Virus record (IMG/VR): IMGVR_UViG_3300045974_000132
Coordinates: 222,394 to 286,393 of that record
Direction: 5' to 3' (one strand)
DNA length: 64,000 bases
The notes below the pieces were generated by a model that did not search any database, was not told the origin of the DNA, and saw only the letters and a list, made by a program, of their open reading frames with translations. Made by a program: the position numbers and the translations under genes. Position 1 is the stretch's first letter. Every line of letters starts with the position of its first letter. Shown piece after piece: positions 47,159-62,937 of this stretch.

Positions 47159-47932
47159 ATGGCCGTTACACGCCGTGTTAAAGCTGTTACTCAAAAGAGT
47201 ACCAAGCCGAAGAAAAAAGATATGTCTGCTCCCGCAGTGAAGGCCCGCAAGGCTGCTGCTAAGGTCCGTAAGAACCCGGCCGTCAAGGCTAAGGTTGCTA
47301 AGGCCCGCAAGGTTCGTGAAGCTCACAAGACCACCAAGGAAAAGCAATTTGACAAAGAGCGCGCCGCTGCTCTGCGTGCAAAGCGCGAAGGTAAGAACCC
47401 GGCTGAAGCCGTAAAGAAGGTTCGTGCCAAGAAGGCTGCTCCGGCCGCTGCTAAGTCCACTCGTGCTGCTAAGGCTGCTACGAAGGCTAAGACTCTGACG
47501 GAAAAGAAGGTTTCGACCCGTAAGCCGCGTACTACTAAGGCCAAGGTTGCTGCTAAGAAGGTCTCGACTCGCAAACCCCGCGCTTCCAAGGCTGTGAAGC
47601 CAGCAGCCAAGAAGGTCAGCACCCGTAAGCCGCGTACCGCTAAGGTCGCTGCCAAGAAGGTCTCGACTCGCAAGCCCCGTGCCACTAAGGTTGCTGCTAA
47701 GCCGGCCGCCAAGAAGGTTTCGACCCGTAAGCCGCGTACTGCCAAGGTTGCAGCCAAGAAGGTTTCGACCCGTAAGCCGCGTACTACTAAGGCCAAGGTT
47801 GCTGCCCCGAAGAAGGTTTCTACGCGTAAGCCGCGTACTTCTAAGCCGGCCGCTCCGAAGAAGGTTTCGACCCGTAAGCCGCGTACCGCTAAGCCGGCCG
47901 CTGCTAAGGTTCGTCGCCCCCGCGCTAAGTAA
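47159..47932 (+). CDS. histone H1-like Lys/Ala/Arg-rich DNA-binding protein
   Basis: Eight KKVSTRKPR repeats, almost no acidic residues in the C-terminal half, AAGGAG RBS. Confidence 0.85.
   Translation: MAVTRRVKAVTQKSTKPKKKDMSAPAVKARKAAAKVRKNPAVKAKVAKARKVREAHKTTKEKQFDKERAAALRAKREGKNPAEAVKKVRAKKAAPAAAKSTRAAKAATKAKTLTEKKVSTRKPRTTKAKVAAKKVSTRKPRASKAVKPAAKKVSTRKPRTAKVAAKKVSTRKPRATKVAAKPAAKKVSTRKPRTAKVAAKKVSTRKPRTTKAKVAAPKKVSTRKPRTSKPAAPKKVSTRKPRTAKPAAAKVRRPRAK
47504..47884 (+). repeat. coding tandem repeat (8 x AAGAAGGTxxxxACxCGxAAxCCxCGx)
   Basis: Units of 45-57 bp with synonymous variation. Confidence 0.9.
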
Positions 47933-49261: not shown

Positions 49262-49522
49262 ATGGAGATAATTATTTCTCTATCTAATACTCCTGAGAAT
49301 GAAGCATACCGCCGTCAGCATATGCCCGTACCGGGTAAAGAGTATAACTTATCTTTGCTAAAAGGCAGCGGTAAGGGCTACTGGGCAGACATGGGCCGAG
49401 TTCATATCGGGTCTATCATAAACGGCATACTCAACTTTATGCGTGTAGGTGCAGACGACGATGAACGGGTGCAACATATCCGTGCTGAGACTATTCCTAC
49501 ACAAGCTCTATTCTCAAGTTAA
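49262..49522 (+). CDS. small protein with SxS leader
   Basis: MEIIISLSN. Confidence 0.7.
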   Translation: MEIIISLSNTPENEAYRRQHMPVPGKEYNLSLLKGSGKGYWADMGRVHIGSIINGILNFMRVGADDDERVQHIRAETIPTQALFSS

Positions 49523-51657: not shown

Positions 51658-51981
51658 TGGAACTATCTATTTCTTTTGGCAATCCTCTACCTTCTCAGTT
51701 TGCGTTGGGTGAGACTGTAGCTGTAGAGCTTCAGAAACTTCAATTAGAAGCTCAAGTTATCGCTGTTGCTTTTGTAGAAGGTAAAGTCCTATACACTGTT
51801 GCCATATATACAGGCTTCACTGAACTAGAGCTTGCTTCGCAGTACGGTTTAACAAATTCAGTAGGCTGGGATGAAAACGGTAGAGAGTTTGTGCGACTGC
51901 AAAACATTGACAGTATCTTCATAAAGCCCTTCAATCCTTTACCAACTTTATTGGTCGGAGGCTCAGATGGAACTGTTTATT
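51620..51981 (+). repeat. imperfect direct repeat of about 50 bp (51620-51671 and 51931-51981) flanking one gene
   Basis: TTTAGCAACTTTGTTGGTCGGAGGTTCTGATGGAACTATCTATT versus TTTACCAACTTTATTGGTCGGAGGCTCAGATGGAACTGTTTATT. Confidence 0.9.
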
Positions 51982-51983
51982 AG
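51657..51983 (+). CDS. hypothetical protein (SH3-like), inserted between the repeats
   Basis: MELSISFG..FALGETV..GKVLYTV..NIDSIFI. Confidence 0.75.
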   Translation: MELSISFGNPLPSQFALGETVAVELQKLQLEAQVIAVAFVEGKVLYTVAIYTGFTELELASQYGLTNSVGWDENGREFVRLQNIDSIFIKPFNPLPTLLVGGSDGTVY

Positions 51984-52233
51984 CGTGTCCGCCCCGGCTA
52001 ACTATGCTGCTTGGCGTAAGCTAATAGAGTTACGCACTAAAGGATCTAGTAGATTTATATGGGCTGACCTAATGGCTGATATAACTGCTCATAACTGTGC
52101 ACCTCGAAACTGGGATCAAGTGCGTAGGGTTGTTAAATAGTTTATCGACAAAGGTAGCTTAGTAGTAATTCATACTAAATCTCATGGACAAGTGTATGTA
52201 ACTCCTAAGTATCTTGAGGAGAATCCTGAATGA
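51967..52233 (+). pseudogene. SxS-leader gene interrupted by an in-frame TAG
   Basis: MELFISVSA..RRVVK-TAG(52138-40)-FIDKGSL..EENPE-TGA. The TGA overlaps the next ATG. Confidence 0.7.
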
Positions 52234-55431: not shown

Positions 55432-56184
55432 ATGTACATCCTCATTTCAACTGCCGGCGACATTGATAAGAAGCTAATATCTGAGGAAGACATTGGCCCT
55501 TATATAGTTCGTAAAGAACTGTGGTCTATGGGTTTTGATAAAACTACACCCGCCACAGAAATGACTTCAGCTTATGCTAAAGACGGCTCGTACATTGGCA
55601 ATGAGGATGTTGCAAAACGTCTTTATGAAAAGTACGGTATTATTCCTCAACGCTCGACTGACAAGCATACGGTTAGCAGTATAGGCAAGAGTGAAACCGA
55701 TGGCAAATGGTATGGTTGGTCACATCGTGCAATTTACGGCTTCCAAGTAGGTGACAAGATTAAAGACGGCGATTGCGGCTTTGATCCTTCAGTAGGCGAA
55801 TACACAATCCAAACAGAACAAGACGCAAAGGTAGCAGCTATGAATTTCGCAGAATCAGTATCCGCAGAAACAACACTTCTTATTAAGTCACGGATCTCTG
55901 TGTCTGATGAAGAACCCGGATACAATGAAAAGCTGTTAATTGCTTTGTTGAAAGCCACCGGCTGTAAGCCTACAAAGATTAAGTACGAAGCAAAAGCCAA
56001 TGTGTATAAGTGCATTAACTGGTCTGCTAAAGTAATGACTAAGATGCAACATATCGGCTGGGAGCCACAACCTGATCTGTCACCTACTTCAACTGGTGAA
56101 TATCACTTCGTTCATTCTGGTGATGAAGCGTGTGTAGTTTCTCCAGAAGGTGGTAAGTTTAGTGTAGAGTTCCCTAAGTTATAA
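55432..56184 (+). CDS. two-domain protein with leader and internal SVS sites
   Basis: MYILISTAG, KWYGWSHRAIYGF domain, ESVSAE and RISVSD, then a domain paralogous to 56714. Confidence 0.75.
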   Translation: MYILISTAGDIDKKLISEEDIGPYIVRKELWSMGFDKTTPATEMTSAYAKDGSYIGNEDVAKRLYEKYGIIPQRSTDKHTVSSIGKSETDGKWYGWSHRAIYGFQVGDKIKDGDCGFDPSVGEYTIQTEQDAKVAAMNFAESVSAETTLLIKSRISVSDEEPGYNEKLLIALLKATGCKPTKIKYEAKANVYKCINWSAKVMTKMQHIGWEPQPDLSPTSTGEYHFVHSGDEACVVSPEGGKFSVEFPKL

Positions 56185-56200: not shown

Positions 56201-56389
56201 ATGAAGATCACGTTTCCTTTGGTTTCCGAATCTAAGAAACCGCACAAGCTTAAAAACCCATTGTTGATTAAGATACACAACCTTGAGCAACAGTTGGACA
56301 AATTACGTGCCCAGCATAAAGCAGAAGAGAAGAAAAAGCTCCAATCTAAGCTTCAGCATGTCACAAAGCCCGTGAAACACAAGGCTTGA
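56201..56389 (+). CDS. small basic protein with SxS leader
   Basis: MKITFPLVSESKK, GAGGAG RBS. Confidence 0.65.
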   Translation: MKITFPLVSESKKPHKLKNPLLIKIHNLEQQLDKLRAQHKAEEKKKLQSKLQHVTKPVKHKA

Positions 56390-56414
56390 CATTCTTGCGT
56401 TTTTGTGATATAAT
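56386..56414 (+). promoter_or_regulatory. consensus sigma70 promoter
   Basis: TTGACA (56386-91), 17 bp spacer, TATAAT (56409-14), extended -10 TG. Confidence 0.9.
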
Positions 56415-56450: not shown

Positions 56451-56702
56451 ATGACGAAAGCAAAGAAACTTGTTGATGAACTTGAAGCGAAAAATGCTGC
56501 TCGTAAAGATCGGGTAGCAAAAGCAAGAATTGCTCGAAAGGCAGAGGAGTTGGAGATCGGCACTTCTGATCCTATCCTGCTAAGTCTGTATCGTGATCTG
56601 CGTGGCTCCCAAGATCAAAGGTTGAAGACAGCGATCAACCAATACGAAGTAGGTTTGATAACAGGTGCAGAATGTGTGCGCCAGATGTTGAAAAATTCAT
56701 AA
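56451..56702 (+). CDS. early hypothetical protein
   Basis: AAGGAG RBS behind the sigma70 promoter. Confidence 0.75.
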   Translation: MTKAKKLVDELEAKNAARKDRVAKARIARKAEELEIGTSDPILLSLYRDLRGSQDQRLKTAINQYEVGLITGAECVRQMLKNS

Positions 56703-56713
56703 AGGGTTTTGTT

Positions 56714-57025
56714 ATGGAAATCGAAATCTCAGTATCGTCTTCTACACCTAATGAAGACAAGTTGGTTGCTTTCTTCAAGAAATCTGGCTGCAATCCTCAG
56801 CGTGTTCACAGCCCTGGTTCTTATGACTTTGAATGTCAAAACTGGGATCTTGAGTTACTCAAGAAAGCTATGAAAGACTGTGGCTGGGAGTCACAAGGTA
56901 AAGGGCTGTTCCCATCTAATGATGAAGGTACTGCATACTTCATTCAAAAGAAAGGTGACGAGCAACTTTGCTGCTTAACTCCGGAACCGTCAGGTTTGTT
57001 TTACATGGCATTCAACGGTTATTGA
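56714..57025 (+). CDS. small protein with SxS leader
   Basis: MEIEISVSS. Paralog of the 55432 C-terminal domain. Confidence 0.75.
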   Translation: MEIEISVSSSTPNEDKLVAFFKKSGCNPQRVHSPGSYDFECQNWDLELLKKAMKDCGWESQGKGLFPSNDEGTAYFIQKKGDEQLCCLTPEPSGLFYMAFNGY

Positions 57026-57034
57026 TTTCGTAAT

Positions 57035-57044
57035 ACTGTAAATA
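57035..57044 (+). promoter_or_regulatory. ACTGTAAATA putative promoter
   Basis: Recurring motif. Confidence 0.6.
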
Positions 57045-57123
57045 AAGGGTATGTGTGACAATGGTGTTTCACCTGCCCTAACTGTTTCACAAATAATCTA
57101 CCACAAAGAAAGCGAGTTTTAAA

Positions 57124-58200
57124 ATGACCACCAATTTCCTGTCCAAAGATGGCCTCCTGAACGTCGAAGCGATTGTTGCACTGGCTCGCGAAATCGACAA
57201 GGTTGCAACCAAGGAACAACTCAAGCCTGCTGAAATTCACTTCGCTGGCAAGGTTATTCCGAAGTACGACGCAGCAAAGGCCAAGGCAGGCGGCGAAGCT
57301 TTTACCAAGAAGCGCGCCCAACTCATTAAGGTTCGTTCGCGTATGCCTGCTTCGGGTTCGCGTGTAAAGATGGTTGCAATGCTTCGCAACTACAAGGAAC
57401 TGGAAGAGTTTGAAGACTTCACGGCAGACTTCAATGCTGCTCTGAAGGCAATTGCAGTCCACAACAAGTTGGCTGAAAAGCTGATCGCTACTTCCAAGAA
57501 GGAAGGTGCCAAGAAGCGTGAAATCGGCGCAAAGGAATTCGACAAGAATGCCGATGCTTTCATCAAGCTGATGGCTGAAGCAGGTGTTAAGTCGAGCAAC
57601 ATCGCAATCGGCATGTCGATGATGGGTAAGACAATCATCGTCAAGCTTCCGAATGGTGGTTATGTTTCTGTGGGCAAGGCTGATGCAGAACGTTTTGCTA
57701 AAGCCAAGGAAGGTGCTTCTGCTGCTCCGGCGAAGGCTGCTGCTACTTCTACACGCGGTTCGACACGCGGTGCTGCAAAGGCTGAACCCAAATCTGTGCC
57801 GCGTCGTTCGCGGGAAGTCTCGAAGCTTGCACCGATCTCCGATGCAATCAAGAAGGTTGGTGCTTCCCGTCGTGCAGCAAAGGGCGTTGCTGAAAAGACT
57901 TCTACGCGCGGTGCACGTGCAGCGAAGGCCGGTACTACCGCAGCGCGTGAAACTCGTTCGGAACGGGCATCGCGTCGTGAAGCTACTGACAAGGTTGTTG
58001 CAAAGGCTTCCCGCTCGGCAGGTAGTGCTTCGTTGAACGCTACGAAGGCCAAGGTTGCCGCTGCTACAAAGCCTGCAAGCACTCGTTCGTCACGTGCCCC
58101 GGCCGCTGCTACAAAGCCGGTTAAGAAGGTTGCTGCAAAGCCGGTTGCTGCTGCAAAGAAGGTTGCCGCTTCATCTACCCGTGCATCGCGTCGCGGTTGA
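57124..58200 (+). CDS. basic nucleoid-like protein A (globular N-terminus plus H1-like Ala/Lys/Arg tail)
   Basis: Tail such as AAATKPVKKVAAKPVAAAKK. Paralog of 58339. Confidence 0.75.
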   Translation: MTTNFLSKDGLLNVEAIVALAREIDKVATKEQLKPAEIHFAGKVIPKYDAAKAKAGGEAFTKKRAQLIKVRSRMPASGSRVKMVAMLRNYKELEEFEDFTADFNAALKAIAVHNKLAEKLIATSKKEGAKKREIGAKEFDKNADAFIKLMAEAGVKSSNIAIGMSMMGKTIIVKLPNGGYVSVGKADAERFAKAKEGASAAPAKAAATSTRGSTRGAAKAEPKSVPRRSREVSKLAPISDAIKKVGASRRAAKGVAEKTSTRGARAAKAGTTAARETRSERASRREATDKVVAKASRSAGSASLNATKAKVAAATKPASTRSSRAPAAATKPVKKVAAKPVAAAKKVAASSTRASRRG

Positions 58201-58228
58201 TAGTTGATCTACTTGTTAAGTAACACCG

Positions 58229-58257
58229 AAGGGAGCCTTAAAAAGCTCCTTTTTTTT
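58229..58257 (+). terminator. intrinsic terminator
   Basis: AAGGGAGC-8 nt-GCTCCTTTTTTTT. Confidence 0.9.
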
Positions 58258-58296
58258 ACGTCCACACCTTTGGTATAGAAAATTCAAAGGTAGATG

Positions 58297-58304
58297 CTAA
58301 TTTA
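58297..58304 (+). promoter_or_regulatory. CTAATTTA putative late promoter
   Basis: Recurring motif 35 bp before the start. Confidence 0.6.
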
Positions 58305-58338
58305 GACATATGGTTTATTAACTAAAGGACGACTTAAA

Positions 58339-59172
58339 ATGGCTAAAATTTCCTTTTCCGCAGCCTTGCTGGCGGATGACTCTTCTATCAAAGTTTCTGT
58401 TTCTGCTGCAAATCCCTATCTTTCTGCGGATGGTTTGATTGATGTTGCTGCCCTAACTAAGTTGGCAAACCGTATCATGACAGCTAATGGGAAAATCCCT
58501 GAATCAGCTAGTCGTGCAAAGCTTATTAGTCCTACCTTCTATACAGCAAAACCTGCTGAGAAGTATTCTGCTTCACTGGAAAAGAAGAATGACCACAAGT
58601 ACAAAACTCTTCGTGGACAACAAGTAAAGTCCCGTACTAAGTTACCTCCTGCAGGTAGCAGCATTAAATTCAAGTTGTTACTTCCTGCGCTACTTGAAGG
58701 TGCTGATAAGACGGTCGCTGCTGAAGTCCGTAAAGCTGTTTCCGCTATCAATAGCCACAACAAGAAGGCTGTTAAGGTAGTAGATAAGGTTAAGACTGAA
58801 AAGGGCAAGATTCGTGATGCAGCCAACAAAGAGTTTGATGCCAACGTTGACGTTGTTACTCAAATCCTTCTTGCTGGTGGTATCAAGGAAACCGGTATTG
58901 CTGTAGGCCAGTCTATGTTCGGTAAGGTTGTGCATGTTAAGCTTCCGAACGGCGGTGTTATCTCTATCGGTAAGTCTGATACTTCCAAGTTCAATGCTGC
59001 TAAGAAGTCCGGTGGTGAAACTGCTGCTGCTCCTGCTGTGAAGCCAGGTCGTGTAACTATCTCCCGCAAAGCACCTGCTGCCAAGCCCGCACGTTCTGCT
59101 CGCGTTGCTACAACTCGCGGTGTTCGTAAGACAAAGGCCGCTACATCTGTTCGCCGGGCTGCTGCTAAGTAA
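58339..59172 (+). CDS. basic nucleoid-like protein B (paralog of 57124 with extra SxS leader)
   Basis: IAVGQSMFGKVVHVKLPNGGVISIGKSD versus IAIGMSMMGKTIIVKLPNGGYVSVGKAD. Confidence 0.75.
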   Translation: MAKISFSAALLADDSSIKVSVSAANPYLSADGLIDVAALTKLANRIMTANGKIPESASRAKLISPTFYTAKPAEKYSASLEKKNDHKYKTLRGQQVKSRTKLPPAGSSIKFKLLLPALLEGADKTVAAEVRKAVSAINSHNKKAVKVVDKVKTEKGKIRDAANKEFDANVDVVTQILLAGGIKETGIAVGQSMFGKVVHVKLPNGGVISIGKSDTSKFNAAKKSGGETAAAPAVKPGRVTISRKAPAAKPARSARVATTRGVRKTKAATSVRRAAAK

Positions 59173-59183
59173 GGAGGCCTGTA

Positions 59184-59837
59184 ATGGCTATCTCTCGTAG
59201 TAATGGCGTTACCCGTCGTAGGGCACGTAAAGCAGGTTTAGATAATGTTGACGGTAATCGCATCATTATTGATGGCCCAAAGATCGTTCGCCGCCTTAAG
59301 GGTGCTTATGTTAAGAAGGGGGCGGCTCTTACTAAGAATGATCTGAAGCAAGAGGAAATAGCACCTTCTGATGATACAGAATCCTCTACCCAGGATCTTC
59401 CCGAAGTAGAGTCTGTTACGGTTACTGACTCTAACACTAAAAAGGAACCTAAAGTTATGGAACGCGTTAAGATCGCCTTATCGGGTGACGTTATCTTCAC
59501 CCCTTACACAGACGGTACTCAGTATGCTTGCCGTCGTGATGCGCTGGCCAATCTACGTCGTCGTATGCCCTCTTTCGAGGTAATGCTGTCAGATGTTACA
59601 GGTGAAGGTCAAATTGACTTTACCTTATCAAATGAGTTTGACATTGAAGGTGAAGAAGTGGCCTTGACTGCACGTGGACTTGCTTCTCCGTATGAAATGG
59701 CTATTCACACTATTACTATCAACTACAAGGATAAGAAGTTTGATGTTAATCCTGTAGATCGTGCACGTAGTCCTGAAGATACTGTTAACTTCCTTAAGCG
59801 AGTGGCGGTGAATTGTGTTAACGGCGTTTATGCTTAA
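59184..59837 (+). CDS. hypothetical protein
   Basis: AAGGAGG RBS. Internal MERVKIALSG. Confidence 0.75.
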   Translation: MAISRSNGVTRRRARKAGLDNVDGNRIIIDGPKIVRRLKGAYVKKGAALTKNDLKQEEIAPSDDTESSTQDLPEVESVTVTDSNTKKEPKVMERVKIALSGDVIFTPYTDGTQYACRRDALANLRRRMPSFEVMLSDVTGEGQIDFTLSNEFDIEGEEVALTARGLASPYEMAIHTITINYKDKKFDVNPVDRARSPEDTVNFLKRVAVNCVNGVYA

Positions 59838-60039
59838 AGTGCAAGCAGAGGCTCGTCGAAAGGTATGTGACTCCTGTGACCAGAAGCGTACTTCTTTCGG
59901 CGTAGACCTTTGCAATAAGTGCGGCTGCGTAATTACTTTTAAAGTCAAGTTACGTGAGTCTGTTTGTCCTCTACATAAATGGGATTCAATAGATGCGGCC
60001 TCAAAAAATACGAATCCTCTCAAGCCATCCCAAGCGTGA
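59830..60039 (+). CDS. small Cys-rich protein (DUF6171-like)
   Basis: R..VC..C..C.KCGC...KVKL...CPL.KW. Confidence 0.65.
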   Translation: MLKVQAEARRKVCDSCDQKRTSFGVDLCNKCGCVITFKVKLRESVCPLHKWDSIDAASKNTNPLKPSQA

Positions 60040-60229
60040 AGAAGAGATACCCAACATTACACACTGGCTTAAAGCAAACCAATGTTCTTTAGTAATGCCT
60101 AATCAGGTATATCATAAGGGCAAGCATATAGGTACGCTTAATGCAGTGGACAGTAAGTTGGTGTTTATTCCTTCAATCACTTGGGAAGAGTGGGACGCTA
60201 TAGATAAAGCACATCCGCACTCTTCGTAA
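59993..60229 (+). CDS. hypothetical protein
   Basis: Fills the gap, start uncertain. Confidence 0.5.
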   Translation: MRPQKIRILSSHPKREEEIPNITHWLKANQCSLVMPNQVYHKGKHIGTLNAVDSKLVFIPSITWEEWDAIDKAHPHSS

Positions 60230-60251
60230 GGCTTAGATCGAGATATATAAC

Positions 60252-60953
60252 ATGAGTGAGATTACTATGCCTAACGGTCGTAAACCAGGTAAGGTTGAAG
60301 CAAAGAAACCGGGTCTAGTAGGGAAACCTGTTGAGCCTGAACAGAAGCGTAAGAAAAAGAAACGTCCTACTGAGGATGCACAACCTAAAGCTGATAAGCG
60401 TTTAAATCGTGCTACCAAGAGACTACCTGATCTTCAATCACAAGCTTCTGACTTGGAAGAGGAGATAGGTAGTTTAGACTTAGAAGGCTCGGGCGGACCG
60501 GAAGCTGTATTCAAACGTGAATACGTTAGTATGCTTCAGTTCAATGCCAAGCTTATCAAACGGTTGAATACGCAACTTGAAAGCACGTTATCTTCGCGGG
60601 ACATATATGCGCTTAGTACGATAATGTCCCAACAGCGGGAGGTTATTGCAGACCTTCGTACTATTGTTGACATGAGCGAACAAGTAGAAATGGTTCAACG
60701 CCAAGTCTTAGTTCCTTTTGTCAGTGATACTACCCAGCTTTTGACTGACGTATATTTCCAACTACGTCGTCTTATAACGGAAACATCCACACCTAGACAA
60801 ACTCAGTTTGCTTTAAATCAATTAGATGATTTGGTAAAGCAGTTTGGATCGGGCTTGCAGACTACGCATGAAACCTCCAAGGATAAGCTTTACCAAATCT
60901 TGCTAGGGGATGCACAACCTGCTACTGCTAAGAAAAGGAAGAACAAGAAATGA
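60252..60953 (+). CDS. hypothetical helical protein with basic termini
   Basis: 233 aa ORF. Confidence 0.75.
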   Translation: MSEITMPNGRKPGKVEAKKPGLVGKPVEPEQKRKKKKRPTEDAQPKADKRLNRATKRLPDLQSQASDLEEEIGSLDLEGSGGPEAVFKREYVSMLQFNAKLIKRLNTQLESTLSSRDIYALSTIMSQQREVIADLRTIVDMSEQVEMVQRQVLVPFVSDTTQLLTDVYFQLRRLITETSTPRQTQFALNQLDDLVKQFGSGLQTTHETSKDKLYQILLGDAQPATAKKRKNKK

Positions 60954-61281: not shown

Positions 61282-61734
61282 ATGTCCTATTCGACTTTCA
61301 AAGAAATGGAGAACCGGATTAGTCCGTTCTTGCGGTTTGCCGAACAAAAAGGTATGTTAGCTTCTCATTCTGAAGAGTCTAAAATGCCTAAGCCTGATAT
61401 GCCGCAACTCAGCTACCTGCGCATTGAATTAGATCGTCTTCGTCCAGGTATGGCTGACTATATCGTCCGTGTTTCTACTCCTTTGTATGAAGGCGTCGAT
61501 AAGTCAAATACAGTCCTTAGCATACGCGGCAATCGTAGCCTTGCTAAGTTTGAAGCTGTGAAGAAGCTAGCCGACGTTATCGGTAAGGAAATGATTGAAC
61601 GTGAAGATGCTACCCATGATTGGGAAAACTTCGATAGCGAACATCTTGCCGACTTGATCGCAAACTTCCTTAAGTTCTTTGCCCTTACAGCCAACGCAGA
61701 TCGTCTTCAATTCACCACTGAAGCTTTGTCTTAA
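61282..61734 (+). CDS. hypothetical protein
   Basis: AAGGAGG RBS. Confidence 0.8.
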   Translation: MSYSTFKEMENRISPFLRFAEQKGMLASHSEESKMPKPDMPQLSYLRIELDRLRPGMADYIVRVSTPLYEGVDKSNTVLSIRGNRSLAKFEAVKKLADVIGKEMIEREDATHDWENFDSEHLADLIANFLKFFALTANADRLQFTTEALS

Positions 61735-61749
61735 ACATAGGTGTAATAA

Positions 61750-62496
61750 ATGAACACCTCGCTTAACGGACTATTTTCTCAGTTTGGCGCTAAAGGTATG
61801 CCTCCCTTTATTAGTGAAGATTTTTCATCTTCATGGGACGCCTATGATGAAAGCGGCCACCTAAAAGAAACCACACCCAGGGAACGCGTGATAAGCGTCC
61901 TTGGGTTTTTGCATTTGATGAAGCAAGCAGGCTATAAGAAAACAGCAGTAAATCCGTACAAAGCGTATGAAGATTTGCTTGCTGAAGAGTTTGGTCAGTA
62001 TGCTAAGACTCTCGCACAGGAGCTTCGTAAGCTTCGTGTGTTTGACCTGTTCCGCATATATAAGACTCACTTCGAGGTAGCGCCTGTGCTACGAGGTAGT
62101 CGTGATATTCATCTAAGCTTTTGTGTTATGCCTAAGCGTAAAGAACCTTTAGATAATACGCTCAACAAAGCAGAAGGCTATTTGTATAATCGTGATCTAC
62201 CCATCTTTCTCCAAGAACGTTGGAAGAAGATGAATATTAAATCAACGTCGATTAAGCCTAGGTCTGCACTACCTAAATACTTTGATCTTATGAAGAGTCC
62301 TTCTGTACTTGGGCGTCTTCCGCTTCTCATTAATAACAATTATTCTTTGCATGTATCTCGATCTGCTGGTGATATGCTTGTCTTCCGCTTTAAGGTTGCC
62401 CAGCCTGTAGAACAAGTATCGTGGATGAGTAAACATGCTCACAACCAGTTACTACGTAAGCTGTGGGTAGCTTCTTTCAAATCTTTGCAGGGCTGA
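61750..62496 (+). CDS. hypothetical protein
   Basis: 248 aa ORF. Confidence 0.75.
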   Translation: MNTSLNGLFSQFGAKGMPPFISEDFSSSWDAYDESGHLKETTPRERVISVLGFLHLMKQAGYKKTAVNPYKAYEDLLAEEFGQYAKTLAQELRKLRVFDLFRIYKTHFEVAPVLRGSRDIHLSFCVMPKRKEPLDNTLNKAEGYLYNRDLPIFLQERWKKMNIKSTSIKPRSALPKYFDLMKSPSVLGRLPLLINNNYSLHVSRSAGDMLVFRFKVAQPVEQVSWMSKHAHNQLLRKLWVASFKSLQG

Positions 62497-62502
62497 CATA
62501 TC

Positions 62503-62937
62503 ATGAAACCTAGCGTACTTAAAGCTCTTGAGCGGGTAGCTTCATTATCTGCGGAAAGTGCAAATTTGGTTGGACAACTAAAGTCCAATCCGAATGAACA
62601 AATAACCGGTGATAATACAGCCACTATAGCGAAGCTTACTTCAAGCATTACCCAATTGAATTCAGAGCTATCTCTTCTACGCATGGAAGCGATTCCTGTA
62701 GATGCGGTATTATCTGATAGTGAGATTGAAAACTTCACTACTTCCTTTGAAGAGTATCTGTCTAAGTCTACCAATATCAAAACAACATTGCTAGGCTTCA
62801 CTAGGACATTCTTTTTGCCCTACTCTCCTCCTGTACGAGTAGTGATTGCTAACACAATCCTAAACTACTGTACAAAAAATGACCTGTCGGCTTCTGATCT
62901 GTGGCGTGACATTGTTGCGAATACGGGGTATCTCTAA
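62503..62937 (+). CDS. hypothetical protein with SLSA motif
   Basis: MKPSVLKALERVASLSAE. Confidence 0.75.
   Translation: MKPSVLKALERVASLSAESANLVGQLKSNPNEQITGDNTATIAKLTSSITQLNSELSLLRMEAIPVDAVLSDSEIENFTTSFEEYLSKSTNIKTTLLGFTRTFFLPYSPPVRVVIANTILNYCTKNDLSASDLWRDIVANTGYL

What the first reader, a model, noticed from the sequence alone, without database searches (positions are those of the whole stretch)
57035..59172. Natural experiment: tandem nucleoid-like paralogs differing by the leader and by promoter class
Seen: 57124 (MTTNFLSKDGLLNVEAIVALAREI) and 58339 (..SVSA-ANPYLSADGLIDVAALTKLANRI) are paralogs. Homology begins exactly after the extra leader of about 24 aa ending SVSA in 58339. The leaderless copy follows ACTGTAAATA and has its own terminator. 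The leadered copy follows CTAATTTA. Both have H1-like basic tails. Inference: one copy condenses or shields phage DNA in the infected cell and the other is packaged and processed in the virion.
Basis: partly seen in the sequence, partly recalled or inferred. Interest (0 to 1): 0.78.

Follow-up and report, generated by a model that had tools for sequence, protein, structure and literature searches.

The report
Paired basic proteins of jumbo phages
A 286-kb pond phage carries two neighbouring old copies of an unknown, strongly basic protein, and the same pair with the same two promoter types recurs in at least ten related uncultivated phages. One copy is made alone and has a long histone-H1-like tail. 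The other is made with the particle genes and has a short N-terminal leader. The pair is a real, conserved division of labour, probably in coating phage DNA, but its function is untested.

Summary
ORFs 57124-58200 (A, 358 aa) and 58339-59172 (B, 277 aa) are paralogues: 36% identity over 211 aa, E 9e-31. Homology starts at A residue 5 and B residue 27. A follows ACTGTAAATA and has its own terminator. B follows CTAATTTA.

It is not a recent "natural experiment". The window is the end of a 286-kb jumbo phage related to PaBG, HRDY3 and Y3. The family is metagenome-only, with 116 clusters at 50% identity.

- **B-type** is the ancestral form. It has an N-terminal leader ending h-S-x-S-A and a very basic core, usually with no tail.
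- **A-type** is one derived clade. It is leaderless, with a less basic core and a variable basic tail.

A lies upstream of B in 10 phages. ACTGTAAA(T)A is kept upstream of A in nine phages and a terminator follows A in all eleven. CTAATTT(A) follows that terminator in six. In this genome CTAATTTA precedes the sheath, tube and prohead protease genes, and ACTGTAAATA precedes the SSB gene.

The core folds confidently (pLDDT 93) but matches nothing in PDB, AFDB, BFVD, the ESM Atlas, Pfam, PHROGs or NCBIfam.

DNA binding, virion packaging and leader cleavage are plausible but only inferred. The H1 likeness is compositional.

The parts
57035..57044 (+). ACTGTAAATA promoter-like motif upstream of A (non-structural or 'middle'-type class)
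   Evidence: 3 in the window against 0.11 expected. 10 exact copies in the genome and 23 of 50 copies with up to 1 mismatch are intergenic. It precedes the SSB gene and other non-structural genes. It is conserved upstream of A orthologues in L006, L008, L033, L035/36, L039, L040, L041 and L042.
57124..58200 (+). Gene A: leaderless paralogue, 358 aa, pI 10.7. The core is residues 1-200 (57124-57723, net +13). The disordered Ala/Lys/Arg/Ser/Thr tail is residues 201-358 (57724-58197, net +32, with STRG-type repeats).
   Evidence: AlphaFold model of the core has pLDDT 93.3. GC3 of the core is 0.545, close to the MCP and SSB genes; the whole gene ranks 34 of 309.
58228..58261 (+). Intrinsic terminator after A (9-bp stem, 8-nt loop, T8)
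   Evidence: A hairpin followed by a T run sits after the A-type gene in all 11 related loci.
58297..58304 (+). CTAATTTA late-type promoter-like motif upstream of B
   Evidence: 21 of 27 genome copies are intergenic. It precedes the tail sheath, tail tube, tail-fibre-like and prohead protease genes. CTAATTT(A) follows the A terminator in L008, L033, L037, L040 and L041.
58339..59172 (+). Gene B: leadered paralogue, 277 aa, pI 10.4. The leader is residues 1-23 (58339-58407), ending VSVSA. The core is residues 24-225 (58408-59013, net +19). The basic tail is residues 226-277 (59014-59169, net +13).
   Evidence: The leader has pLDDT below 50 in the AlphaFold model.
59184..60953 (+). Two co-oriented downstream genes (59184-59837 and 60252-60953) with basic N-terminal stretches. 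They are probably transcribed with B. The second is the homologue of Erwinia phage Y3 gp180 (phrog_23026).
   Evidence: There is only an 11-nt gap after B and no terminator was called between them.

Best explanation
A and B are the two members of a conserved gene module in a clade of uncultivated jumbo phages related to PaBG, HRDY3 and Y3. Both encode a roughly 200-residue, strongly basic domain with an unrecognised fold.

Shown:
- The leadered form (B-type) is ancestral.
- One old duplication gave the A-type. It lost the leader, gained a disordered H1-like basic tail, and became a monocistronic unit with its own ACTGTAAATA promoter and terminator.
- B stayed under the CTAATTTA class that also drives structural genes.

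Inferred:
- A is an abundant protein of the infected cell. It coats or compacts replicating phage DNA, with the core as the dimerising or DNA-contacting module and the tail as a charge-neutralising arm, like H1, Hc1 or HupB tails.
- B is made late and enters the prohead. Its leader is removed at h-S-x-S-A by the prohead protease.
- B then travels with the packaged DNA as an internal head protein, in the manner of T4 internal proteins or adenovirus pVII.
For: - Paralogy.
- Two architectures across about 180 family members: B-type cores carry net +15 to +28 and usually no tail. A-type cores carry +3 to +18 plus a tail of +8 to +32.
- A-type forms one starred clade of 59 rows nested among leadered sequences.
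- The order A then B is kept in 10 phages. The promoter motif is kept upstream of A and a terminator follows A in all 11 loci.
- CTAATTTA precedes the sheath, tube and prohead protease genes. ACTGTAAATA precedes the SSB gene, an ATPase gene and an HNH gene.
- The phage encodes its own sigma-70-family factor, as reported for the PaBG group (PMC7412058).
- GC3 of the A core is 0.545, like MCP (rank 10) and SSB (rank 28). B ranks 211 of 309.
- The leader varies from 6 to about 250 residues, yet S-x-S-A always sits directly before the fold. The leader is modelled as disordered.
- A begins exactly where the proposed mature B would begin.
- The MCP has a conserved L-S-x-S-T at residues 33-37, and the prohead protease has L-A-S-S-S-T just before its catalytic domain.
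Against: - There is no direct evidence for DNA binding, virion location or cleavage.
- S.SA as such is not enriched in the proteome: 51 observed against 41 +/- 6 expected.
- A similar N-terminal M-x-L-x-I-S-x-S motif heads at least 10 unrelated small proteins. It also begins an internal domain of the Tad6-like protein, so it may be only a structural first strand.
- The CTAATTTA class also drives homing endonuclease genes, so 'late' does not mean 'virion'.
- ACTGTAAATA also precedes a second tail-tube gene.
- The genes downstream of B lead to a giant SNF2 helicase gene, not to head genes.
Confidence: 0.4

Rival explanations
1. Both proteins are non-virion nucleic-acid-binding factors that act at different times. 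A acts with the replication genes and B with the late genes, for example as accessory factors in transcription, recombination or packaging. The leader is an uncleaved N-terminal strand or interaction peptide.
For: - B sits in an operon that runs towards a giant SNF2 helicase gene and a DNA polymerase gene, not towards head genes.
- The same N-terminal motif heads many small, apparently non-structural proteins. In one case it is clearly part of a domain.
- The late motif also drives endonuclease genes.
Against: - The leader length is highly variable and the leader is predicted disordered, yet it ends in a fixed motif at the domain border.
- A similar motif is found in the MCP and the prohead protease.
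Confidence: 0.3
2. The pair is an anti-defence device. The basic proteins coat phage DNA to hide it from host nucleases or sensors, with B injected alongside the DNA and A covering new copies. This is a sharper version of 'shielding', not nucleoid organisation.
For: - The neighbourhood is rich in counter-defence genes. A Tad6-like gene lies at 55432-56184.
- An Acb2/Tad1-hairpin gene and an Acb1 gene lie near the A orthologues in L040 and L041.
Against: - No match was sought in PADLOC and no known anti-defence family matches A or B.
- The association with those neighbours is loose, at the scale of kilobases.
- The module position is fixed relative to the helicase cluster rather than to variable islands.
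Confidence: 0.15
3. Both are head-assembly proteins (scaffold or core). The 55-residue helix drives oligomerisation, and both leave or stay in the capsid.
For: - The models show a long central helix, residues 97-152 in A and 124-179 in B.
- B is under a late promoter.
Against: - A is co-regulated with the SSB gene and other non-structural genes, and is a stand-alone unit.
- The genes lie far from the head module at genome positions 93-116 kb.
- Scaffolds are usually acidic. These proteins have pI above 10.
Confidence: 0.1
4. This is a recent tandem duplication whose differences in leader, promoter and terminator are accidental.
For: The two genes are adjacent and co-oriented.
Against: - Identity is only 36%.
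- Both types are present in 10 divergent phages with the same order and signals.
- A-type is a separate, well-supported clade.
Confidence: 0.02

Closest known systems
Phage T4 internal proteins IPI, IPII and IPIII, with their capsid targeting sequence (own knowledge)
   Same: They are small basic proteins made late. A short N-terminal peptive directs them into the prohead and the prohead protease removes it. They are packaged with the DNA and injected. This matches the proposed fate of B.
   Different: - There is no sequence or fold similarity.
- T4 cleaves after Glu in L/I-x-E. Here the conserved motif is h-S-x-S-A and Glu is optional.
- T4 has no leaderless intracellular paralogue.
- Packaging and cleavage are not shown here.
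Adenovirus core protein pVII / VII (PMC7998265, PMC11852808)
   Same: It is a histone-like, Arg/Ala-rich DNA-condensing protein. It is made as a precursor whose N-terminal peptide is removed by the virion protease, and it enters the cell with the genome.
   Different: It is a eukaryotic virus protein and is not homologous. It has no folded 200-residue core of this type and no paired unprocessed paralogue.
H1-like basic tails: eukaryotic linker histone C-terminal domains, chlamydial Hc1 and Hc2, and the H1-like proteins reported in 'moraphage' jumbo phages (PMC12619734)
   Same: They share the Ala/Lys/Arg/Pro/Ser/Thr-rich disordered tail composition seen in A, in the B tail and in the 47159-47932 repeat protein. 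The idea that jumbo phages use such proteins to compact their DNA has already been raised.
   Different: - A and B give no Pfam H1, Hc1 or HC2 match. Only the separate gene 47159-47932 gives a sub-threshold HC2 hit.
- The folded core is unrelated to the winged helix of H1.
- The moraphages are a different lineage.
phiKZ and SPN3US inner-body or head proteins cut by a T4 gp21-like protease (PMC10052503; Thomas et al. 2012 as cited in PMC5646251)
   Same: These are jumbo phages that package many proteins after propeptide removal at a short consensus.
   Different: Their consensus is S/A/G-X-E. This phage is not phiKZ-like, and nothing is known about its protease specificity.
Motif-only phage promoters read by phage sigma factors: the T4 late promoter TATAAATA with gp55 (own knowledge) and the sigma factor of the PaBG group (PMC7412058)
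   Same: They are short AT-rich single-box motifs 20-80 nt upstream of starts. TGTAAATA differs from the T4 late box by one base. A phage sigma-70-family gene is present.
   Different: - Here the structural genes use the other motif, CTAATTTA.
- Which factor reads which box, and the timing of each class, are unknown.

Membership tests
Histone H1 / Hc1 / HC2-like nucleoproteins (Pfam PF00538, PF07432, PF07382) | Sequence match to the family profile | tested here: not met
   The Pfam scan of A and B at E <= 1 gave only chance hits, bHLH_NPAS4 and DUF6582. No recurrent family appeared across 139 members.
Histone H1 / Hc1 / HC2-like nucleoproteins | Lys/Arg/Ala-rich disordered tail of high positive charge | tested here: met
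   The A tail has net +32 over 158 aa and the B tail +13 over 52 aa, both with pI 12. A-type tails carry +8 to +32 across the family. This is a likeness of composition, not membership.
Bacterial nucleoid-associated proteins (HU/IHF, H-NS, Fis, NdpA) | Profile or fold match | tested here: not met
   There were no Pfam, NCBIfam or PHROG hits. Foldseek and VIA found nothing significant. One AFDB 'nucleoid-associated protein' hit had TM 0.16, which is noise.
Capsid-targeted, protease-trimmed internal head proteins (T4 IP type) | Late transcription together with structural genes | tested here: inconclusive
   B follows CTAATTTA, the motif before the sheath, tube and protease genes. No transcript data exist.
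Capsid-targeted, protease-trimmed internal head proteins (T4 IP type) | N-terminal propeptide removed by the prohead protease at a consensus shared with other head proteins | tested here: inconclusive
   h-S-x-S-A is conserved at the leader-domain border. L-S-x-S-T is conserved in the MCP, and a like motif sits before the protease domain. S.SA is not enriched overall, and no cleavage data exist.
Capsid-targeted, protease-trimmed internal head proteins (T4 IP type) | Presence in purified virions | not testable with these tools
   The family is absent from all cultured phages searched. The positive control was.
VOC / glyoxalase-bleomycin-resistance fold (paired beta-alpha-beta-beta-beta modules) | Structural superposition over both modules | tested here: not met
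Rho-independent terminator | GC-rich hairpin followed by a T run at the gene end | tested here: met
   The element lies at 58228-58261. Equivalent hairpins follow all 11 A-type genes.

The most novel reading that the evidence does not exclude
A and B define a new, orphan-fold family of phage 'chromatin' proteins working as a two-state system. One is a highly expressed, H1-tailed form that coats phage DNA inside the cell. The other is a protease-matured form packaged and injected with the genome. Further, the leader motif (M-x-h-x-h-S-x-S...) would be a general capsid-targeting and processing signal in this phage clade. It is shared by ten or more otherwise unrelated proteins, including a Tad6-like anti-Thoeris protein. 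That would mean these phages inject a cargo of counter-defence proteins addressed by one common tag.
Probability: 0.15. Interest if true: 0.8.

Novelty: new variant of a known kind. Interest (0 to 1): 0.55.

Why it matters
Jumbo phages must manage and protect a quarter-megabase of DNA, both in the cell and in the capsid. Outside the nucleus-forming phages, little is known about how they do this.

This finding offers a conserved, well-delimited pair of basic proteins with three useful properties:
- a confidently predicted but unrecognised fold;
- clear regulatory separation into two conserved promoter classes, one of which gives a stand-alone transcription unit;
- a built-in comparison between a leadered, tail-less form and a leaderless, tailed form.

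Together these make a ready experimental handle on phage DNA packaging proteins, propeptide-guided capsid loading and promoter classes in an uncultivated clade. If the leader is a general capsid address tag, it would also predict which other proteins, including counter-defence proteins, are injected.

Tried and rejected
- **Family libraries.** Pfam, PHROGs and NCBIfam scans of A and B gave nothing. A Pfam scan of all 139 members found no recurrent family.
- **Cultured phages.** tblastn of A and B against 50,697 GenBank phages gave no match. A megablast of the region gave no match. A profile search of Y3, HRDY3, PaBG and RSL1 found nothing. The positive control on the phage's own genome worked.
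- **Solved structures by sequence.** A profile against PDB sequences found nothing.
- **Y3 gp181.** hhalign of the family against gp181, the gene at the syntenic position, gave probability 0.1%.
- **Collection scans.** IMG/VR and metagenome scans with the family alignment gave only 1 and 5 loci. The 139-sequence alignment was too diverse for that tool.
- **RNA evidence.** No RNA run was listed. DNA runs are pond and freshwater metagenomes.
- **Glu-specific cleavage.** A T4- or phiKZ-type cut in the leader was rejected because many leaders have no Glu.
- **Sec signal peptide.** Rejected. Typical leaders are only 8-13 residues long and have no hydrophobic core.
- **Proteome-wide S.SA enrichment.** Not significant, at 51 against 41 +/- 6. 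S[VLI]SA is mildly enriched, at 18 against 8.8 +/- 3.
- **DNA-level explanation of the shared N-terminal motif.** Rejected, because the codons differ.
- **Fold search availability.** It was retried only after the stated wait.
Full report
**Where this is.** The window is the last 64 kb (222,394-286,393) of a 286,393-bp virus record with direct terminal repeats. The DNA is held by pond and freshwater metagenome runs. The head-tail connector is 42% identical to those of the Erwinia Y3, Alexandra and Dickeya AD1 jumbo phages. The major capsid protein is 58% identical to Pseudomonas phage HRDY3 and 54% to PaBG. The phage is therefore an uncultivated member of the PaBG/Y3-like jumbo myoviruses, not a phiKZ-like nucleus former. 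It encodes a sigma-70-family factor, as described for the PaBG group (PMC7412058).

**Check of the observation.** ORF A (57124-58200, 358 aa) and ORF B (58339-59172, 277 aa) exist. They are clear paralogues: 36% identity over 211 residues, E 9e-31. These are the only two copies in the genome. The alignment starts at A residue 5 and B residue 27, so B has 23 extra N-terminal residues ending VSVSA.

ACTGTAAATA lies at 57035-57044. It occurs 3 times in the window against 0.11 expected, and none of 100 shuffles reached 3. A hairpin plus T8 terminator lies at 58228-58261. CTAATTTA lies at 58297-58304.

Both proteins end in Ala/Lys/Arg/Ser/Thr-rich tails of pI 12, with net charge +32 and +13.

**The family.** Neither protein matches Pfam, PHROGs or NCBIfam, and neither matches any of 50,697 GenBank phage records. 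Metagenome protein collections hold many relatives:
- 18 clusters close to B;
- 78 clusters close to A;
- 116 representatives at 50% identity for the family profile.

Sorting about 180 full-length members by what lies outside the shared core of about 200 residues gives two architectures.
- **B-type.** These begin with a leader of 6 to about 250 residues. It usually opens with M-x-K and a hydrophobic strand, and it always ends in h-S-x-S-A(A)N(P)F/Y-L-x-x-D-G. The core is very basic (net +15 to +28). There is usually no C-terminal tail.
- **A-type.** These begin directly at (N)(P)F-L-x-x-D-G. The core is less basic (+3 to +18). There is a low-complexity basic tail (+8 to +32) whose sequence is not conserved.

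On a tree of the core, the leaderless, tailed proteins form one supported clade (59 rows, support 96). It is nested among leadered sequences, and B of the window sits in a neighbouring leadered clade. The leadered form is therefore ancestral and the A-type arose once. The basic tail on this particular B is unusual for its type.

**The pair is old and its signals are conserved.** In every related contig with enough context, an A-type gene lies upstream of a B-type gene on the same strand, 0.1 to 5 kb apart. The contigs are the window, L004, L006, L008, L033, L037, L039, L040, L041 and L042.

ACTGTAAA(T)A is present 45-125 nt upstream of the A-type gene in the window, L006, L008, L033, L035/36, L039, L040, L041 and L042. 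A hairpin followed by a T run comes after the A-type gene in all eleven loci. CTAATTT(A) follows that terminator, or sits just before the B-type gene or its operon, in the window, L008, L033, L037, L040 and L041.

These phages share only 35-60% protein identity in this family. The conservation of the short DNA motifs is therefore good evidence that they are functional signals.

**What the two motifs drive.** In this genome, 21 of 27 CTAATTTA copies lie in the 10% of sequence that is intergenic. They typically sit 18-50 nt before a start codon. Downstream genes include two tail sheath genes' neighbours: a tail sheath gene, a tail tube gene, a tail-fibre-like gene and the prohead protease gene. 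They also include several homing endonuclease genes.

ACTGTAAATA has 10 exact copies, and 23 of 50 copies with at most one mismatch are intergenic. It precedes the SSB gene, an ATPase gene, an HNH gene and several unknown genes. It also precedes a protein with basic STR/RGRR repeats and a poly-acidic tail, and oddly a second tail-tube gene.

I read CTAATTTA as the late class and ACTGTAAATA as a class dominated by non-structural (middle-type) genes. The timing itself is inferred, because no RNA run could be listed.

Third-position GC is a codon-bias proxy in this genome. The MCP ranks 10th and SSB 28th of 309 genes. The A core has GC3 0.545 and whole-gene A ranks 34th, while B ranks 211th. Together with the stand-alone promoter-gene-terminator layout, this suggests that A is made in large amounts.

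**Structure.** With 19 sequences, B modelled at pLDDT 71.5 and the leader and tail fell below 50. With a 139-sequence alignment, the A core modelled at pLDDT 93.3 and pTM 0.81. The order of elements is:
- a beta-alpha-beta-beta-beta unit;
- a 55-residue helix;
- a three-stranded sheet;
- a final helix.

An Atlas lead to the VOC/glyoxalase fold covers only the common beta-alpha-beta-beta-beta unit and did not hold up. The fold gives no functional hint.

**The leader.** Arguments for a removable propeptide:
- Its length and sequence vary freely, yet the S-x-S-A motif is fixed at the border of the fold.
- It is modelled as disordered.
- The paralogue A works without it and begins exactly at that border.
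- The MCP has L-S-x-S-T at residues 33-37, conserved in PaBG and Y3 and nearly so in HRDY3.
- The prohead protease has L-A-S-S-S-T just before its catalytic domain. Prohead proteases commonly cut themselves at such a place (own knowledge).

Arguments against:
- S.SA is not enriched in the proteome as a whole.
- Glu-specific cleavage of the T4 or phiKZ kind is excluded.
- A similar N-terminal motif (M-E/K-L/I-x-I/L/V-S-x-S) heads at least ten mutually unrelated proteins of this phage, 9 against 1.2 expected, and it is conserved at the protein level rather than the codon level.
- In the Tad6-like protein the same motif starts an internal domain homologous to the small protein encoded at 56714-57025.

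That shared motif could be a general capsid address. It could equally be a favoured first beta-strand. I cannot decide between these.

**Best reading.** The architecture, phylogeny and regulation are shown. Function is inferred.

An ancestral, late-expressed, very basic protein with an N-terminal leader probably enters the prohead, is trimmed and stays with the packaged DNA, like T4 internal proteins or adenovirus pVII. It was duplicated long ago.

One copy lost the leader and moved part of its positive charge into a disordered H1-like tail. It became a strongly expressed stand-alone gene co-regulated with SSB, probably coating phage DNA in the cell.

Rival readings cannot be excluded. These are non-virion nucleic-acid-binding factors acting at two times, a DNA-hiding counter-defence role, or scaffold-like head proteins. 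The idea of a recent accidental duplication is refuted.

**Comparison with the known.** The tails resemble H1, Hc1 and HC2 in composition only; profile membership was tested and not met. H1-like proteins have been noted in another lineage of aquatic jumbo phages, together with the suggestion that they compact phage DNA (PMC12619734). The present family is unrelated to those. Its novelty lies in the orphan fold, the conserved pairing of a leadered and a leaderless, tailed form, and the conserved assignment of the two to different promoter classes.

No cultured phage carries the family (control). Tests will need heterologous expression or a new isolate.

**Verdict.** I rate interest at 0.55 and novelty as a new variant of a known kind.

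Noticed in passing
window 49262-49522, 51967-52140, 56714-57025; genome starts 64037(-), 79265(-), 107344(-), 108578(-), 108992(-), 114143(-), 132788(-), 113086(-): At least ten mutually non-homologous proteins begin with the same peptide motif, M-E/K-L/I-x-I/L/V-S-x-S. That is 9 within the first 10 residues against 1.2 expected. The codons differ, so selection is on the peptide. Genes right after B in relatives start the same way (MQISISAL, MKTIISAN). One protein, at genome 112385-113086(-), starts MKISISAANP, like the end of the B leader. This is a possible common address or processing tag, or a favoured first strand.
   Followed up: partly
genome 95806-96903(-) (MCP) and 100674-101810(-) (prohead protease): The MCP has L-S-x-S-T-G-E at residues 32-38, conserved in PaBG and Y3 and nearly so in HRDY3. 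The protease has L-A-L-A-S-S-S-T-G just before its catalytic domain. This is a candidate cleavage consensus of the prohead protease and resembles the end of the B leader.
   Followed up: partly
window 55432-56184: This 250-aa protein has a strong Pfam match to Tad6, a type I Thoeris inhibitor (E 6.9e-36, residues 24-144). Its C-terminal domain is homologous to the small protein encoded at 56714-57025. In relatives, Acb1 and Acb2/Tad1-hairpin genes lie near the A orthologue (L041, L040).
   Followed up: partly
window 47159-47932: This 257-aa protein has pI 12 and carries about nine tandem copies of AAKKVSTRKPRT. Its GC (0.57) and GC3 (rank 5 of 309) are unusually high. It gives a sub-threshold Pfam HC2 (histone H1-like) hit at E 0.0016. 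It is a better candidate for a pure H1/Hc2-like DNA condenser than A or B.
   Followed up: partly
genome 171017-172111(-) and 170554-170928(-): Two more proteins share the STR/RGRR/AKAAP basic repeats seen in the A tail. The first (364 aa, phrog_22271) follows an ACTGTAAATA motif and ends in a poly-Asp/Glu tail of about 90 residues.
   Followed up: no
window 56386-56414: A perfect sigma-70 consensus, TTGACA-17-TATAAT with an upstream TG (12 of 12), lies before the small ORF 56451-56702. It is probably a host-RNAP early promoter and would be a third promoter class within 2 kb of the finding.
   Followed up: no
genome 201208-202320(-): A phage-encoded sigma-70-family factor (Sigma70_r2, E 1.2e-7) lies next to the SSB gene. 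It is a candidate reader of one of the two motif classes.
   Followed up: no
genome 24580-26274(+), 90771-92360(-), 89313-89870(-), 88670-89230(-): There are two tail sheath genes and two tail tube genes. The second tube gene follows ACTGTAAATA placed directly after the stop codon of the first.
   Followed up: no
window 61282-62937 and the genome start: The gene order downstream of B is conserved from this phage to Erwinia phage Y3. It runs from the Y3 gp180 homologue at 60252-60953, through small genes, to a giant SNF2 helicase gene of about 1,900 aa that here must lie across the genome ends. Y3 has an unrelated acidic protein (gp181) where A and B sit.
   Followed up: partly
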